Assembly (NCBI RefSeq): GCF_001194135.2
Contig: NC_068996.1
Coordinates: 5,571,101-5,605,323, forward strand
Direction: 5' to 3'
Source: Octopus bimaculoides
Taxonomy: Eukaryota
Length of the DNA: 34,223 nucleotides
Numbering within the stretch: position 1 is the stretch's first letter; each line of letters begins with the position of its first letter. Below the pieces are notes generated by a model that made no database searches, was not told the origin of the DNA, and saw only the letters and a program-made list of their open reading frames with translations. Both the position numbers and the translations under genes were made by a program. Shown piece after piece: positions 12,685-18,165 of the stretch.

Positions 12685-12980
12685 TGTTGTTGTACTTGGG
12701 GATGGTCATATTACCAGTTTAGCCTATAAAAACACACGCACTGTATATTTGGTGTTAATTTGCTTCAGCTTTATATTACATTACATTACATTAATCCTAT
12801 TTCGGCCAGAGTTCTTTCGTCACACTTCTGTGACCTCATCAGTGGTCCTTTGCTTTCTTCTTTCATTACACTAATGTAATGTAATGTAATATAAAGCTGA
12901 AGCAAATTAACACCAAATATACAGTGCGTGTGTTTTTATTGGCTAAACTGGCAATATGACCATCCCCAAGTACAACAACA
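12685..12980. repeat. Fold-back element 1: 109-bp inverted arms, 78-bp spacer
   Basis: Arms 12685-12793 and 12872-12980 are reverse complements with 2 mismatches (compared by hand). Confidence 0.95.
12804..12848 (-). ncRNA. Minimal type I hammerhead ribozyme motif (C3-G8 core)
   Basis: Minus strand GGACCA-CTGATGA-G-GTCACA(GAAG)TGTGAC-GAA-AG(AA)CT-C-TGGCC: stem I CCA/TGG plus GG/CC, canonical core, 6-bp stem II, 2-bp stem III, CUC cleavage triplet. Confidence 0.75.
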
Positions 12981-13052
12981 TCTGTTTCAACACACGATTT
13001 CACATCAAAAATCTTGCAAAGCAAAGCAAATATATATATATATATATATATA

Positions 13053-13135
13053 TTCTTTTCTTTTAATTGTTTCAGTCATTTGACCGCGGCCATGATGCTG
13101 GAGCACTGCCTTTAATCGAGCAAATCGAACTTAGG
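13053..13135 (-). mobile_element. SINE family A, 3'-terminal fragment
   Basis: ttgtttcagtcatttgaccgcggccatgatgctggagcactgcctttaatcgagcaaatcga is the reverse complement of the family A 3' end. Confidence 0.8.
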
Positions 13136-13275
13136 ATATGTACTATAGTTTCTAATGCAATCACCAGAGACACACAACTACATGAATTAAAGGCTATCTA
13201 TCAATCTATCTGTGTTTATAAGCCATATAAGAAACACACAAAAACCGTTAGATTCACTACAACATTTAAATTTAA

Positions 13276-13322
13276 TTTGTCAAAATATTTTCGTCGCTTT
13301 CAGACCACGACCTGTTCACTGA
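13276..13322 (-). ncRNA. Variant hammerhead motif (G3-C8), stem I 5' strand truncated
   Basis: Minus strand TCA-GTGAACA-G-GTCGT(GGTCTGAAA)GCGAC-GAA-AATATT-T-TGACAAA. Confidence 0.55.
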
Positions 13323-13337
13323 GATGCAGCACGGAAT

Positions 13338-13388
13338 TTTGTCAGTGAACAGGTAGCGGCCTCAAAGCGACGAAAATATTTTGACAAA
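13338..13388 (+). ncRNA. Variant minimal type I hammerhead motif (G3-C8 core)
   Basis: TTTGTCA-GTGAACA-G-GTAGC(GGCCTCAAA)GCGAC-GAA-AATATT-T-TGACAAA: 7-bp stem I, core with both 3 and 8 swapped, palindromic stem III AATATT. Confidence 0.62.
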
Positions 13389-14139
13389 TTATATTTAGAT
13401 GTTCAAGTGAATCTAACGGTTTTTGTGTATTATTTTAAATGGCTTATAAACACCTTCCACGCTGCAATCGTTTATATACGTACATTATATATANNNNNNN
13501 NNNNNNNNNNNNNNNNNNNNNNNNNNNNNNNNNNNNNNNNNNNNNNNNNNNNNNNNNNNNNNNNNNNNNNNNNNNNNNNNNNNNNNNNNNNNNNNNNNNN
13601 NNNNNNNNNNNNNNNNNNNNNNNNNNNNNNNNNNNNNNNNNNNNNNNNNNNNNNNNNNNNNNNNNNNNNNNNNNNNNNNNNNNNNNNNNNNNNNNNNNNN
13701 NNNNNNNNNNNNNNNNNNNNNNNNNNNNNNNNNNNNNNNNNNNNNNNNNNNNNNNNNNNNNNNNNNNNNNNNNNNNNNNNNNNNNNNNNNNNNNNNNNNN
13801 NNNNNNNNNNNNNNNNNNNNNNNNNNNNNNNNNNNNNNNNNNNNNNNNNNNNNNNNNNNNNNNNNNNNNNNNNNNNNNNNNNTATATATATATATATATA
13901 TATATATATCTGATAGCTGTAATATATGCCTTATGTTCACTTTTATATTTTGAGTATTATTGACATTATTCAAGAAAATATTGATTCTCATTGACACCGC
14001 AATCACAATTCACATAGAACTAAAAAAAATATCTTATCGACCAAAGTAAACTTCGACAAATTTAATTTCTGTAATAGTAAATAATTCGAAATGCACTTCA
14101 GTGACTATGTCATTGTGGATTTAGTTAATTTGCCTGATA

Positions 14140-14340
14140 ATTGGACTCATGGTTGTAAGAATGTGGTTTCGATTCCTGGACCGGACGACGCGTAGTGTTC
14201 TTGAGCAAAACACTTACCTTTCACGTCGCTCCAGTCCACTCAGCTACTAAAAGTGAGTAATGCTTCGTCGGACTGGCATCCCATCCAGGAAGGACGCCAG
14301 AGAAACCGGCCCTATAATCCTTACAGAATAATGTGGACTA
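14140..14340 (+). mobile_element. Degenerate SINE related to family C
   Basis: B-box ggtttcgattcc, gtgttcttgagcaaaacactt, ggactggcatcccatccagg, agaaaccggccctat. Confidence 0.6.
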
Positions 14341-14559
14341 ACCTAACCACACACACGCACGCACAGACATCCTCTACATATGTGACGAAGCCAATAACAT
14401 GCGAAAATATCGAAGTCACTAATAGCAACGCATTTCCTTCTATAATAAGGTGTATATAATATATACCTCATCGATTTTTCAATTTTTTTTTATCCACAGC
14501 AAAATGAATATGACGCTAAATATTTTAAAGCACACTATCAATTTTTATAAGTTTTATTA

Positions 14560-14940
14560 CACCCACACAAACACGCGCACGCACACATACAAACACATAC
14601 ACACAAACACACACACACAAATACACACACAAACACACAAACACATACACACAAACACACATACAAACACACACACACATACAAACACACACACACATAC
14701 AAACATACACACACACACAAAAACACACACATACAAGCACACATACACAAACGCACACACACAAACGTACACACACAAACACACACTCACAAAACACAAA
14801 CAAACACAAACGCACGCACACACACACAAACATACACAAACACACACAAACACACACACACAAACACACACACACGAACAAATACACATACACACACACA
14901 CACATACACACAAACACACACACACACACAAACATGCACA
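14560..14940. repeat. Degenerate (CA)n/(CAAACA)n microsatellite
   Basis: Directly visible. Confidence 0.95.
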
Positions 14941-15736: not shown

Positions 15737-15765
<29 letters not shown>

Positions 15766-15767
<2 letters not shown>

Positions 15768-16480
15768 CACCCACATGATAAGCAGTTGTCTGAAAAGGTC
15801 ATCACGGTATTATCTACCGATGAGACATGATGTTGTAGTTTGGACACTCTGTAAGGAAATCCGCCTGAAGGATAACCTCGAGGACAAAGAAATGAAAACC
15901 CATTTTATGGTGGAATGTCCCAGTGAAGACCTCAAAAAATGTAAGCACAATAGACTTGATATAATGATTTGGGATAGAGAAGAGAAGCTGTGTAGTACAG
16001 TTGTGGAAATTAGCTGCCCAGCGAATGTCAACATAAAACTAAAGATCAGTGAAGAAAAGAGAATAGCTATGCTGAACTATTGAGAAATTTGCAGTTAATC
16101 TATCCAGATTAAAAGTTCAGGTTTATACCTGTAACTACTGAGGCCATGGGATATGTAACACACTGCCTAAATACCAATCTTGAGAAATTAGGCTTCTCAA
16201 AACCAGAAAGGAGGAAGCTACAAAACCAATCCATCACTGGAACTGTAAAAATCTGTAAAACTTTCCAGAAGTTTATCATTTAAATATATATGAGCATGTC
16301 TAGATATGCAACTGTATGCATGAGGAAACTTACATAAAACAAACCATACAAATCTGCACATACGCATACATACATACAAACAAGTATGATGTTGAAATTC
16401 CAATGAAGGAGTCTTGAATTTAGGTTAGAAACCGCCTCTTTCTCTATTGGCAAGAAATATTGAAATAAAACTGAACAATG
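15766..16480 (+). mobile_element. 5'-truncated R4/Dong-clade non-LTR retrotransposon (zinc-knuckle end, restriction-like endonuclease, 3' UTR), disrupted
   Basis: Translates ITHMISSC...YYLPMRHDVV (H-x4-C plus RHD motif) and KHNRLDIMIWDREEKLC...VEISCP...FRFIP (R-[P]-D-I...E of a PD-(D/E)xK RLE domain). AATAAA at 16464. Flanked by (CATA)n on both sides. Confidence 0.8.
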
Positions 16481-16537
16481 ATATACATACATACATACAT
16501 ACATACATACATACATACATACATACATACATACATA

Positions 16538-17103
16538 ACTGTTCCTATATGGTTGTGGAACGAGGAAAGGCTAAAATCCACCCTAACAACATCTCCATCA
16601 ATGGCCTATCTGTTTCTCCAATAGCCACTCATAATAAAAAGGAGTACTGGTGGAATGTACCAGTGAAAACCTCAATAAAATGTAAACACAACAGATCTGA
16701 TATAATGATTTGGGATAGAGAAGAGAAACTGTGTACAGTTGTGGACATCAGCTGCCCTTCGGATGTTAATATGAAGCTGAAGATCAGTGAAAAAGAGAAT
16801 CTCTACGCTGAACTATTGAGAAATTTGCAGTCACTCGATCCAGATTAAAAGTTCAGGTTTATACCTGTAATTATTGGAGCACTTGGATGTGTAATACACT
16901 GCTTAAGTACCAATCTTGAGAAATTAGGCTTCTCAAAACCAGAGAAAGCTAATTCGAAGACTACAGATCCAATCCATCGCTGGAACTAAAAATCTATAAA
17001 ACTTTCGGAAGTTTATCATTTAAATATACATGAGCATGTCTAGATATGAAAATATATGCATGAGAATACATAAGTAAAACAAAACGTACAAATCTACATG
17101 TAC

Positions 17104-17105
<2 letters not shown>
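16538..17105 (+). mobile_element. Second R4/Dong-clade fragment, tandem to the first
   Basis: EYWWNVPVKTSIKCKHNRSDIMIWDREEKLCTVVDISCPSDVN...YAELLRNLQ...FRFIPVIIGALG; nucleotide-colinear with 15905-16375. Confidence 0.8.
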
Positions 17106-17135
<30 letters not shown>

Positions 17136-17761
17136 TATTAATGTCACTATTATCGTTATTTTTATTACTACGATGATAATTTCACTTCTTAAGCATTTTA
17201 CTTTTCGCCATTAGCTTTATTTATATCTTAGCGTTTGTGTGCAGATACGCGTAGACCCATACAAGGCCAGCTTTCAACCTTCGTCCTCTGTATCCCTATA
17301 CTTACGAACTCTTTGCCCTCAATTTATTCAGCTACCGACTAATGCCCGTCTTCCTTGCATTCTTTCTTTCCCTTTATTATCTCTCTTCTTTTTCTTTTTC
17401 TCTTCCTACATACTCTCTACAAACATTCTCTTTCTTCCAGTCTTACTGTTTTTTATCTCTTCCCTCTCTTTATCTCTCCCAGTCTCTCCTCCTAATCATC
17501 TGTCTTTTTCAGTTGTACTCAAAAATGTATGGGTTTGAGTACACTCACGTGTTTTTACGTGTGTGTGTGTGCAAGTTCATGTGTGTATATATGTGTTTGC
17601 AGCCGCGAGTGTATGGGTGTGCATGTGTATGTGTGTGTGTGTATTTGTGTGTGTGTGTACATGTGCGTGTATGTATAGATATATACATATATATATATAT
17701 TCACATACATACGCATTATTATATCAATAATAATAACACACGCACTGGTTCAATATCACTT

Positions 17762-18040
17762 TCTTTTGTTAGTCAATTGGTTAAATATCTAACTCACTAA
17801 CTAATTAATCGATACGTTGTTTAATATGTTGGTCAAACAATCAATCGATTATTTGTTTGTCAAAATCCTTTCGTCGCTACTCACAGACCTTGAAGGAAGA
17901 AGAAATGTCATTGATAAGGCCACGAATATTGACGGAAGAATTTTGACAAATAAACAAATGATTGATTGCTTAACCAATACATCAAAGAAATTATCGATTA
18001 GTTAGTTGGGTTGATATTTAATTGATTGACTAACAATAGA
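17762..18040. repeat. Fold-back element 3: about 110-bp diverged inverted arms
   Basis: ttgttagtcaattggttaaatatc...ctaactaattaatcgata...caatcaatc...tttgtcaaaat pairs with attttgacaaa...gattgattg...tatcgattagttag...gatatttaattgattgactaacaa. Confidence 0.8.
17906..17948 (+). ncRNA. Decayed hammerhead-like motif (U3-A8 core)
   Basis: TGTCA-TTGATAA-G-GCCA(CGAATAT)TGAC-GGA-AGAATT-T-TGACA: same spacing as 13338-13388; G at position 13 and a stem II mismatch indicate decay. Confidence 0.4.
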
Positions 18041-18056
18041 GAAATAATAATTAATC

Positions 18057-18165
18057 AGTGCATGTGTTTATTATTATTGACATGACAACCTTCCCAAGAC
18101 GCGACAAGATTTGTTTCAACACACGAATTCGCATCAAGAGTCTTGCAAAACCAAATGCAAAGACG
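18057..18165 (+). repeat. Diverged copy of the fold-back 1 right arm plus flank (12923-13030)
   Basis: cagtgcatgtgtttatt...atgacaaccttcccaag...tgtttcaacacacgaattcgcatcaagagtcttgcaaa versus cagtgcgtgtgtttttatt...atgaccatccccaag...tgtttcaacacacgatttcacatcaaaaatcttgcaaa. Confidence 0.75.

What the first reader, a model, noticed from the sequence alone, without database searches (positions are those of the whole stretch)
12685..18165. Family of hammerhead-bearing fold-back elements with covarying catalytic cores
Seen: three separate long inverted repeats within 5.4 kb, each with hammerhead-spaced motifs at its centre. All the motifs have a 7-nt core, an extra G after A9, a stem II of GTC(A/G)...(T/C)GAC type, a GAAA-like element and a 6-nt stem III. 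The cores read CTGATGA, GTGAACA and TTGATAA, so positions 3 and 8 stay Watson-Crick complementary in three different ways. In each structure the ribozyme-sense strands diverge from the centre (a 5'-to-5' junction near stem I). Established: positions 3 and 8 form a tertiary pair in active hammerheads, and Penelope-like elements carry minimal type I hammerheads in their pLTRs and often show inverted truncated pLTRs. Inference: a Penelope-related, non-coding (retrozyme-like) family whose ribozymes would be missed by CUGANGA-only searches.
Basis: partly seen in the sequence, partly recalled or inferred. Interest (0 to 1): 0.88.

Follow-up and report, generated by a model that had tools for sequence, protein, structure and literature searches.

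The report
Octopus Penelope-type inserts carrying hammerhead motifs
The three small palindromes in this octopus DNA are back-to-back, truncated tail ends of a Penelope-like jumping gene that carry its usual minimal hammerhead ribozyme motif, which is a known kind of insertion, except that one family has flipped a conserved catalytic base pair (C3-G8 to G3-C8).

Summary
Three non-microsatellite inverted repeats (12685-12980, 13212-13453, 17716-18088) each have hammerhead-homologous segments at the centre, five in all. A fourth copy is half hidden in the gap at 27924-28147. The genome is Octopus.

The anatomy matches what is published for Penelope-like element (PLE) insertions:
- two 5'-truncated copies joined head to head;
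- a hammerhead about 110-190 nt from the 3' end;
- an extra "tail" on one side only;
- (TA)n or AT-rich targets.

An unrelated 20-kb O. vulgaris locus holds independent copies with different junctions.

The extra base after A9, G10.1-C11.1, the short near-palindromic helix III, opposite-strand pairs and U3-A8 covariation were all published in 2014. Only two of the five motifs keep an intact core. The TTGATAA copy also carries GGAA in place of GAAA, and its partner has lost the core.

The one feature I did not find in the literature is G3-C8 (GUGAACA). It is present in all three units of that family that keep this region, from two independent insertions in two species, with the rest of the core intact.

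There are no tandem repeats, so "retrozyme-like" is not supported. No RT or GIY-YIG ORF was found in the window. Interest is modest.

The parts
12685..12871 (-). Unit U1L. On the minus strand it reads: 23 nt upstream sequence, hammerhead motif, about 110 nt, then a 3' end at ...ACAACAACA (12685). It has no tail and abuts a (TA)/(TGTA)n tract at 12656-12684.
12804..12848 (-). Hammerhead motif of U1L, with a canonical core: GGACCA CUGAUGA G GUCACA-GAAG-UGUGAC GAA AGAACU C|UGGCC. Predicted cleavage lies between 12809 and 12808.
   Evidence: Sequence. The minimum-free-energy fold gives helix I plus helix II. CM score 50.3 bits.
12872..12980 (+). Unit U1R: an inverted partner truncated about 11 nt downstream of the hammerhead position, 98% identical to U1L.
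12981..13030 (+). One-sided tail of the IR1 insertion (TCTGTTTCAACACACGATTTCACATCAAAAATCTTGCAAAG...), followed by (TA)n at 13031-13054.
   Evidence: Homologous to 18112-18161 (84%) and to 27812-27912 on the minus strand. Absent from the left side.
13212..13322 (-). Unit U2L. Its 5' end is cut 3 nt before the core and its 3' end is at 13212, next to a (CTAT)n-like tract. It lacks the 17-nt extension.
13276..13322 (-). Hammerhead motif of U2L, with a G3-C8 core: UCA GUGAACA G GUCGU-GGUCUGAAA-GCGAC GAA AAUAUU U|UGACAAA.
   Evidence: CM score 57.1 bits
13323..13453 (+). Unit U2R. It keeps about 15 nt upstream of helix I (GAUGCAGCACGGAAU).
13338..13388 (+). Hammerhead motif of U2R, with a G3-C8 core: UUUGUCA GUGAACA G GUAGC-GGCCUCAAA-GCGAC GAA AAUAUU U|UGACAAA. 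Helix I has 7 bp. Stem II has one A.G mismatch.
   Evidence: Passes the relaxed descriptor. CM score 60.5 bits.
13454..13470 (+). One-sided 3' extension of the IR2 insertion (CTTCCACGCTGCAATCG), followed by AT-rich sequence, (TA)n and the gap at 13494-13882.
   Evidence: Both units of the O. vulgaris copy carry this extension.
17716..17897 (-). Unit U3L, old and decayed. Hammerhead remnant at 17856-17897: CUUCA-A G GUCUG..GCGAC GAA AGGAUU U|UGACAAA.
   Evidence: CM score 38.9 bits
17898..18109 (+). Unit U3R. Hammerhead-derived motif at 17904-17950: AAUGUCA UUGAUAA G GCCAC..UGAC GGA AGAAUU U|UGACAAA. It has U3-A8 but also A13G.
   Evidence: CM score 58 bits
18110..18174 (+). One-sided tail of the IR3 insertion, followed by (GA)n and a gap.
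27812..27923 (-). Fourth copy: the end of a unit plus its tail, ending in (TA)n. The inner part is hidden by the gap at 27924-28147.

Best explanation
These are independent insertions of the 3'-terminal part of Penelope-like retroelements (PLEs) of Octopus. There are three, plus a fourth that is half hidden by a gap.

Structure (shown). Each insertion consists of two heavily 5'-truncated copies joined head to head. The inverted repeat is therefore a by-product of integration, not a functional fold-back. Each unit reads: (short upstream sequence) - minimal type I hammerhead motif - about 110-190 nt - 3' end. One unit of each pair also carries an extra terminal "tail".

Mechanism (inferred from the published PLE mechanism).
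1. A dimeric RT/GIY-YIG protein cuts both strands of an AT-rich or (TA)n target.
2. It primes cDNA synthesis on both strands from either of two internal start sites near the 3' region of the element RNA. This would explain a tail on one side only.
3. The two short cDNAs are joined at their 5'-truncated ends.

Status of the hammerheads (shown). The motifs are inherited from master copies, where they lie in the terminal repeat. In these genomic stubs they are relics. Two keep an intact core (U1L with C3-G8; U2L/U2R with G3-C8) and the others are decayed.

The G3-C8 core (part shown, part inferred). GUGAACA was already present in the source element of the U2 family when it transposed (shown). Across families, helices I and II change by compensatory pairs around an otherwise invariant core. 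This indicates the hammerhead fold was maintained in the source lineages (inferred). Whether G3-C8 cleaves is not shown.
For: Organism: Octopus.

Inverted repeats and unit orientation.

Independent insertions. An O. vulgaris locus unrelated to the window (L001) holds a U2-family head-to-head pair. It is about 90% alike in the arms but has a different central junction, different flanks, and the 3' extension on both sides. L001 also holds a U1-family pair with a tail and (TA)n. Variable 5' truncation is the mark of reverse-transcribed copies.

One-sided tail. It is seen in IR1, IR3 and the L001 U1-family copy. Copy 4 also carries the tail, but its partner is hidden by a gap.

Targets: (TA)n, (CTAT)n or AT-rich sequence.

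Published PLE traits that match:
- an inverted 5'-truncated copy;
- a 30-40 bp tail at one end only;
- a bias towards microsatellite targets;
- a hammerhead near the 3' end;
- assembly problems at such insertions (PMC8557442);
- cleavage and extension of both DNA strands;
- two internal RT start sites that delimit the tail;
- an AT-rich target (PMC11167929).

Hammerhead homology:
- The CM separates 8 segments (39-60 bits) from background (<=12 bits).
- 77% of cells pair, against 26-41% when partners are slid. There are compensatory changes in helix I (2 pairs), helix II (GC:4, AU:3) and the 3-8 pair.
- The extra base after A9, G10.1-C11.1 and a long helix II match PLE minimal hammerheads (PMC4209133).
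- U1L and the 55-nt U2 majority sequence fold into helix I plus helix II. The U2 majority sequence has z = -2.9, with 0 of 200 shuffles folding as well.

G3-C8:
- It is present in window U2L and U2R and in the left unit of the L001 U2 pair.
- A C3G/G8C double mutant partly restores cleavage in a PLE hammerhead.
Against: - No RT or GIY-YIG ORF and no pseudo-LTR or tandem arrangement was found in the window. The parent element was not retrieved, so PLE membership rests on structure alone.
- The tail here is about 50-65 nt in the U1/U3 families, against 30-40 bp in the literature.
- Only 8 motif copies could be examined, representing roughly 3 lineages. A third octopus locus of 25 kb (L002) has none.
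- Individual genomic copies do not fold better than shuffled sequence (z from 0.1 to -1.3).
- Rfam hammerhead models give no hit.
- Hammerhead cleavage is dispensable for PLE insertion in vitro, so conservation of the motif need not mean catalysis.
Confidence: 0.78

Rival explanations
1. One reading: a non-autonomous, non-coding, retrozyme-like family. The fold-back units would be the mobile entity and would spread through self-cleaved, possibly circular, RNAs.
For: - No ORF lies in or near the copies.
- All copies seen are short and end within about 25-80 nt upstream of the motif.
- Animal retrozymes are reported to derive from PLE pseudo-LTRs.
Against: - Retrozymes are direct tandem repeats of 150-450 bp with canonical type I hammerheads. 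Here there are no direct repeats of the unit, the units are inverted, and the motifs are the minimal PLE type.
- A transcript through an inverted pair holds one sense and one antisense motif and would fold into a long hairpin instead.
- The 5' ends of the units differ between copies. Only one of the inverted partners starts near the predicted cleavage site.
Confidence: 0.1
2. The non-canonical cores are not compensatory variants of an active ribozyme. G3-C8 and U3-A8 would be inactive or neutral states carried along because PLE mobilisation does not need hammerhead cleavage.
For: - Hammerhead mutants do not affect PLE insertion in vitro.
- Naiad PLEs thrive without hammerheads.
- U3R also has A13G and U3L has lost the core.
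- The L001 U1-family copy has U3.G8 through simple decay.
- With about 3 lineages, two Watson-Crick outcomes have roughly a 1 in 16 chance if the positions are free.
Against: - In the U2 family every other invariant core base is intact, while helices I and II differ from U1 by compensatory pairs.
- G3-C8 is the double change known to restore part of the activity.
- The G3 family has U17 rather than C17, which avoids the G3-C17 trap discussed in PMC3884650.
Confidence: 0.3
3. Fold-back or MITE-type DNA transposons whose centre resembles a hammerhead by chance.
For: These are long, near-perfect inverted repeats of about 300 bp in AT-rich DNA. They give generic hairpin hits to miRNA families.
Against: - The centre, not the ends, varies by truncation between independent copies.
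- One arm carries a tail that the other lacks.
- No terminal-repeat plus target-site-duplication signature was seen.
- The motif is shared by families whose arms are otherwise barely alignable, and it shows compensatory changes.
- The chance expectation for such a motif is about 0.05 per window.
Confidence: 0.04
4. Assembly artefact: false palindromes in a gap-rich short-read assembly.
For: The window has 17 gaps, most of them next to microsatellites. PLE structures are known to trouble assemblies.
Against: - The arms have diverged (98%, 90%, 72%), which artefactual duplication would not produce.
- The same head-to-head structure is present in the chromosome-level O. vulgaris assembly.
Confidence: 0.02

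Closest known systems
Minimal type I hammerheads of Penelope-like elements (Cervera & de la Pena 2014, PMC4209133)
   Same: - Type I topology with a short helix I.
- A long helix II (5-6 bp here).
- An unpaired base between A9 and 10.1.
- G10.1-C11.1.
- A very short, (near-)palindromic helix III that implies action as a dimer.
- Pairs of motifs 100-700 bp apart on opposite strands.
- High sequence variety within a genome.
- 3-8 covariation (U3-A8 in Schistosoma Cercyon).
   Different: - The host is a cephalopod; I found no paper describing octopus hammerheads.
- One family carries G3-C8, which I found reported only as an engineered mutant.
- No cleavage data exist for these motifs.
PLE insertion architecture (Craig et al. 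2021, PMC8557442; Frangieh et al. 2024, PMC11167929)
   Same: - An inverted 5'-truncated copy joined head to head.
- A tail at one end only.
- A (TA)n or AT-rich target.
- A hammerhead upstream of the RT start region.
- Both DNA strands used as primers.
   Different: - The copies here are extreme stubs (about 110-250 nt per unit), with no ORF and no pseudo-LTR.
- The tail is longer (about 50-65 nt) in the U1/U3 families.
- The PLE clade is unknown.
Metazoan non-LTR retrozymes (Cervera & de la Pena 2020, PMC7229834; Li et al. 2026 preprint)
   Same: Short, non-coding, AT-rich repeats with type I hammerheads, related to PLE terminal regions.
   Different: Retrozymes are direct tandem arrays with canonical hammerheads and abundant circular RNAs. 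Here the units are inverted pairs, the motifs are the minimal type, and expression could not be examined.
Natural U3-A8 hammerheads (Perreault et al. 2011, PMC3088659)
   Same: A Watson-Crick swap at the tertiary 3-8 pair with the rest of the core kept.
   Different: The U3-A8 copy here is a single decayed copy. The well-supported swap is G3-C8.
L1 twin priming inversions
   Same: Both produce 5'-truncated retrocopies that contain an inversion, through priming on both strands.
   Different: In twin priming the two segments are adjacent, non-overlapping parts of the RNA. Here the two arms copy the same 3' region.

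Membership tests
Penelope-like element (insertion of) | ORF with a telomerase-like RT plus a GIY-YIG endonuclease | tested here: inconclusive
   A Pfam scan of all open segments >=55 aa of the window found no family at all. 5'-truncated stubs are not expected to keep the ORF.
Penelope-like element (insertion of) | Inverted 5'-truncated copy adjoining the 5' end, giving inverted repeats, with variable truncation between copies | tested here: met
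   The junctions differ between window IR2 and the L001 copy.
Penelope-like element (insertion of) | Terminal extension ("tail") present at one end only | tested here: met
   Met in IR1, IR3, IR2 (17 nt) and the L001 U1-family copy. Copy 4 shows the tail, but its partner is hidden by a gap. The tail length of 50-65 nt exceeds the published 30-40 bp.
Penelope-like element (insertion of) | Insertion into AT-rich DNA or microsatellite | tested here: met
   Flanks are (TA)n, (TGTA)n or (CTAT)n in the window, (CA)n/(TA)n at the L001 U1-family copy, and AATT at the L001 U2 copy.
Penelope-like element (insertion of) | Partial tandem arrangement or pseudo-LTRs (typical of longer copies) | tested here: not met
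   There are no direct repeats of the units in the window or in L001. This is a frequent feature of longer copies rather than an obligatory one for stubs.
Hammerhead ribozyme, minimal PLE type | Core: C3 U4 G5 A6 N7 G8 A9 ... G12 A13 A14, A15.1-U16.1, H17 | tested here: inconclusive
   - U1L: fully met.
- U2L and U2R: met, except that 3-8 is G-C.
- U3R: U3-A8 plus A13G.
- U3L: core deleted.
Hammerhead ribozyme, minimal PLE type | Helices I and II flanking the core, supported by covariation | tested here: met
   77% of cells paired against 26-41% when slid; 4 pairs with changes on both sides. Only about 3 independent lineages are represented.
Hammerhead ribozyme, minimal PLE type | Unpaired base between 9 and 10.1, G10.1-C11.1, palindromic 15.2-16.2/loop 3 | tested here: met
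   The extra G and G10.1 are present in all five window motifs, but C11.1 pairs cleanly only in four (U3R's stem II is mismatched). A perfect palindrome is present only in the U2 family (AAUAUU). U1 AGAACU gives 4 of 6 pairs in a dimer.
Hammerhead ribozyme, minimal PLE type | Match to curated hammerhead covariance models (Rfam) | tested here: not met
   No hammerhead family hit at gathering score or at E<=10. The curated models did not detect these helix-III-poor motifs.
Hammerhead ribozyme, minimal PLE type | Site-specific self-cleavage | not testable with these tools
   This needs in vitro transcription, or RNA end mapping.
Non-LTR retrozyme | Direct tandem repeats of 150-450 bp, each with a hammerhead | tested here: not met
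   Only inverted pairs were found.
Non-LTR retrozyme | Expression as small circular RNAs | not testable with these tools
MITE / fold-back DNA transposon | Constant terminal inverted repeats with a target-site duplication, and symmetrical ends | tested here: not met
   The ends are asymmetric (one-sided tail) and the centre is variable.

The most novel reading that the evidence does not exclude
Octopus carries a PLE lineage whose hammerhead is catalytically active with a natural G3-C8 pair, and with U17 instead of C17. In that case the identity of the 3-8 tertiary pair can flip in nature in more than one way while the ribozyme stays under selection. Surveys of PLE hammerheads that use CUGANGA (or UUGANAA) descriptors would then under-count whole families.
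Probability: 0.3. Interest if true: 0.5.

Novelty: new member of a known kind. Interest (0 to 1): 0.3.

Why it matters
- It explains a recurrent class of small palindromes and assembly breaks in octopus genomes as ordinary PLE integration products.
- It extends PLE minimal hammerheads to cephalopods.
- The G3-C8 family, if active, would be a natural counterpart of a rescue mutant used for twenty years to argue for the 3-8 tertiary pair. It would also justify loosening hammerhead search descriptors.
- Otherwise the finding repeats what was published in 2014-2024.

Tried and rejected
- **Rfam.** Searches at gathering score and at E<=10 gave no hammerhead hit, only generic hairpin matches to miRNA families.
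- **Descriptors.** A strict hammerhead descriptor gave 0 hits because each copy has one flaw. A relaxed descriptor found only U2R.
- **Reads.** No read-based test of the gap, of copy number or of RNA ends was possible.
- **Other copies through spurious ORFs.** Looking up a window ORF gave nothing on record. Searching a concatenated translation of the elements gave no hits.
- **More octopus DNA through repeat-derived proteins.** Only two usable loci came back: L001 (O. vulgaris, with copies) and L002 (O. bimaculoides, with none).
- **Metagenome scan.** The conserved 3' half of the motif gave 0 matches.
- **PLE ORF in the window.** None was found, nor upstream of the retroposon fragment in L001.
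- **Literature gaps.** The supplements of Craig et al. 2021 with octopus PLE consensus sequences are not held. Lunse et al. 2017 is not held.
- **Idea dropped: the unit continues into a PLE ORF start, as in the anole element.** The (TAATG)n stretch after the U1 motif has stops in all frames.
- **Idea dropped: inverted copies start at the ribozyme cleavage site.** Only one of five does.

Full report
**What is in the sequence**

The region lies in AT-rich (36% GC), microsatellite-laden, gap-rich DNA. Three inverted repeats stand out from the microsatellite background:
- IR1: 12685-12793 / 12872-12980, 98% complementary.
- IR2: 13233-13322 / 13342-13431, 90%; blastn extends it to 13212-13453.
- IR3: 17762-17856 / 17946-18040, 72%; blastn extends it to 17716-18088.

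The gap at 13494-13882 lies between IR2 and IR3, inside a (TA)n tract that is visible on both edges. Each element sits wholly inside a gap-free block, so only the quoted spacing depends on the gap.

**The motifs**

Read 5' to 3' on the strand that gives a hammerhead, the centres contain:
- U1L (12848-12804, minus): GGACCA CUGAUGA G GUCACA-GAAG-UGUGAC GAA AGAACU C|UGGCC
- U2R (13338-13388, plus): UUUGUCA GUGAACA G GUAGC-GGCCUCAAA-GCGAC GAA AAUAUU U|UGACAAA
- U2L (13322-13276, minus): the same, with stem II GUCGU/GCGAC, but helix I cut to 3 bp by the junction
- U3R (17904-17950, plus): AAUGUCA UUGAUAA G GCCAC..UGAC GGA AGAAUU U|UGACAAA
- U3L (17897-17856, minus): CUUCA-A G GUCUG..GCGAC GAA AGGAUU U|UGACAAA

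Three qualifications apply:
- IR1 holds a single motif. Its right-hand unit starts about 11 nt downstream of the motif position.
- U3R has A13G and a poor stem II, and U3L has lost two core bases.
- Only U1L and the U2 pair keep every invariant base.

**Is it more than chance?**

- A covariance model of the aligned motifs finds exactly five segments in the window and three in an O. vulgaris locus, at 39-60 bits. The best background hit in 80 kb scores 12 bits.
- A relaxed structural descriptor that allows any Watson-Crick 3-8 pair hits once (U2R), against 0.05 expected per dinucleotide-shuffled window. A strict one hits nothing.
- Rfam's hammerhead models see none of the motifs. Only generic long-hairpin miRNA families match.
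- The motifs are therefore homologous to one another and hammerhead-shaped, but curated models do not recognise them.

**Organism and other copies**

- A retroposon fragment in the window matches O. bimaculoides and O. vulgaris proteins. Repeat-derived peptides match O. bimaculoides proteins.
- A 20-kb piece of an O. vulgaris chromosome, fetched for an unrelated reason (L001), contains two more elements.
- The first is a U2-family head-to-head pair at 16750-17011. Its arms are about 90% like window IR2, but it has unrelated flanks and a different central junction. There the left unit keeps CACGGAAUUUUGUCA GUGAACA G..., and the right unit is cut inside the core.
- The second is a decayed U1-family pair at 13061-13433.
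- A 25-kb O. bimaculoides locus (L002) has none.
- Different truncation points at unrelated loci mean that each inverted pair was formed anew at insertion, from an RNA-derived copy.

**Anatomy of a unit**

- Each unit runs: hammerhead, then about 110-190 nt, then a 3' end.
- In IR1, IR3 and the L001 U1-family copy, one unit of the pair continues into a shared extension (TCTGUUUCAACACACGAUUUCACAUCAAAAAUCUUGCAAAG...). The extension ends in (TA)n or (GA)n, and the partner unit lacks it.
- The half-hidden copy at 27812-27923 carries the same extension, but its partner lies in the gap.
- IR2 has a 17-nt extension on the right unit only. The O. vulgaris copy has it on both units.
- Flanks are (TA)n, (TGTA)n, (CTAT)n or (CA)n tracts, or AATT.

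**Comparison with what is known**

Craig et al. 2021 describe PLE insertions in the following terms:
- they are highly 5'-truncated;
- they often have an inverted 5'-truncated copy at the 5' end that creates inverted repeats;
- they carry a 30-40 bp tail, often at one end only;
- they favour microsatellites;
- they are a source of assembly problems.

Frangieh et al. 2024 report for an anole PLE:
- the protein cuts and extends both DNA strands at AT-rich sites;
- reverse transcription starts at two adjacent internal sites, and the sequence between them is the tail;
- the hammerhead lies about 90 nt upstream of those sites;
- hammerhead mutants do not impair insertion;
- C3G/G8C partly restores cleavage.

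Cervera and de la Pena 2014 describe PLE minimal hammerheads with:
- a base between positions 9 and 10.1;
- G10.1-C11.1;
- a long helix II and a short helix I;
- a palindromic helix III;
- pairs on opposite strands 100-700 bp apart;
- U3-A8 covariation.

Perreault et al. 2011 had already seen U3-A8 in nature. Every structural point in the finding except G3-C8 is therefore already described.

**Most likely mechanism**

Shown: the head-to-head organisation, the variable truncation, the one-sided tail, the AT-rich targets and the homology of the motifs.

Inferred from the literature: a PLE RT/GIY-YIG dimer nicks both strands. It primes on both from either of two start sites in the element's 3' region, and the two short cDNAs are joined 5' end to 5' end.

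The palindrome is therefore a scar of integration. A transcript through it would contain one sense and one antisense motif and would form a long hairpin, not a ribozyme dimer.

**The covariation claim**

On the eight motifs, the proposed pairs hold in 77% of cells, against 26-41% when partners are slid. Changes on both sides occur in helix I (two pairs), in helix II (G-C in the U2 family, A-U in U1/U3) and at 3-8 (GC:3, CG:1, UA:1, UG:1, one unpaired). These are few events, from about three lineages.

G3-C8 is solid as a lineage trait:
- It is present in all three U2 units that retain the region, from two independent insertions in two species.
- The rest of the core is intact.
- The 55-nt majority sequence folds cleanly into helices I and II (z = -2.9).
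- This family has U17, whereas the C3-G8 family has C17. That fits the idea that G3 can be trapped by C17.

U3-A8 is not solid. It occurs in one old copy that also has A13G. Its partner lacks the core, and the O. vulgaris U1-family copy shows U3.G8 from simple decay.

I found no report of a natural G3-C8 hammerhead in the held literature. One key paper (Lunse et al. 2017) was not available.

**What is not supported**

- "Retrozyme-like" requires direct tandem repeats and canonical hammerheads. Neither is present.
- No RT or GIY-YIG ORF was found in the window, so PLE membership rests on architecture.
- Individual genomic copies do not fold better than shuffles.
- Catalysis is untested.

**Verdict**

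This is a real and correctly observed feature. It is best explained as ordinary, heavily truncated Penelope-like insertions in an octopus genome that carry relic minimal hammerheads. It is a new member of a known kind. One modestly new detail deserves a genome-wide count and a cleavage assay: a family with a G3-C8 core.

Noticed in passing
window 15195-15610; partial copies at 36-256(-), 10130-10263(-), 13048-13128(+), 22386-22745(-), 27231-27357(-); also L001 and L002: A high-copy interspersed repeat of about 410 nt, SINE-like, shared by O. bimaculoides and O. vulgaris at 67-85% identity. One partial copy starts directly after the IR1 tail and its (TA)n tract.
   Followed up: partly
window 15908-16332 and 16600-17075; L001 10150-10446: Two neighbouring copies, 85% alike, of the 3' end of a retroposon. 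They carry an ORF remnant (...KHNRxDIMIWDREEKLC...IPVIIGALG...) and each is preceded by (CATA)n. The O. vulgaris homologue is annotated as a hypothetical protein. Pfam gives no domain.
   Followed up: partly
window 25950-26540, both strands: N-terminal fragments of a mariner-like transposase (DERSGRPATSRTEKNI...) in opposite orientations, with frameshifts and stops. The best database match carries PF01359.
   Followed up: partly
window gaps, e.g. 12479-12655, 13494-13882, 18207-18759, 27924-28147: Most of the 17 assembly gaps are bordered by (TA)n, (CA)n, (CATA)n or (GA)n tracts. Four of them abut the hammerhead-bearing insertions, and one hides the inner half of a fourth copy.
   Followed up: partly
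window 12718-12946 and 13234-13428: At a permissive threshold, Rfam matches these palindromes to the plant and insect miRNA precursor families MIR4208 and MIR7996 (E about 1e-10, far below gathering score). This is a generic long-hairpin artefact. It is also a reminder that such PLE scars could be mistaken for miRNA or hairpin-RNA loci.
   Followed up: no
L001 13061-13140 (minus-strand unit): In the O. vulgaris U1-family pair, the inverted partner begins at ...UUAGACAAAG. That is within a base or two of the predicted hammerhead cleavage site. It is the only one of five partners that does so.
   Followed up: no
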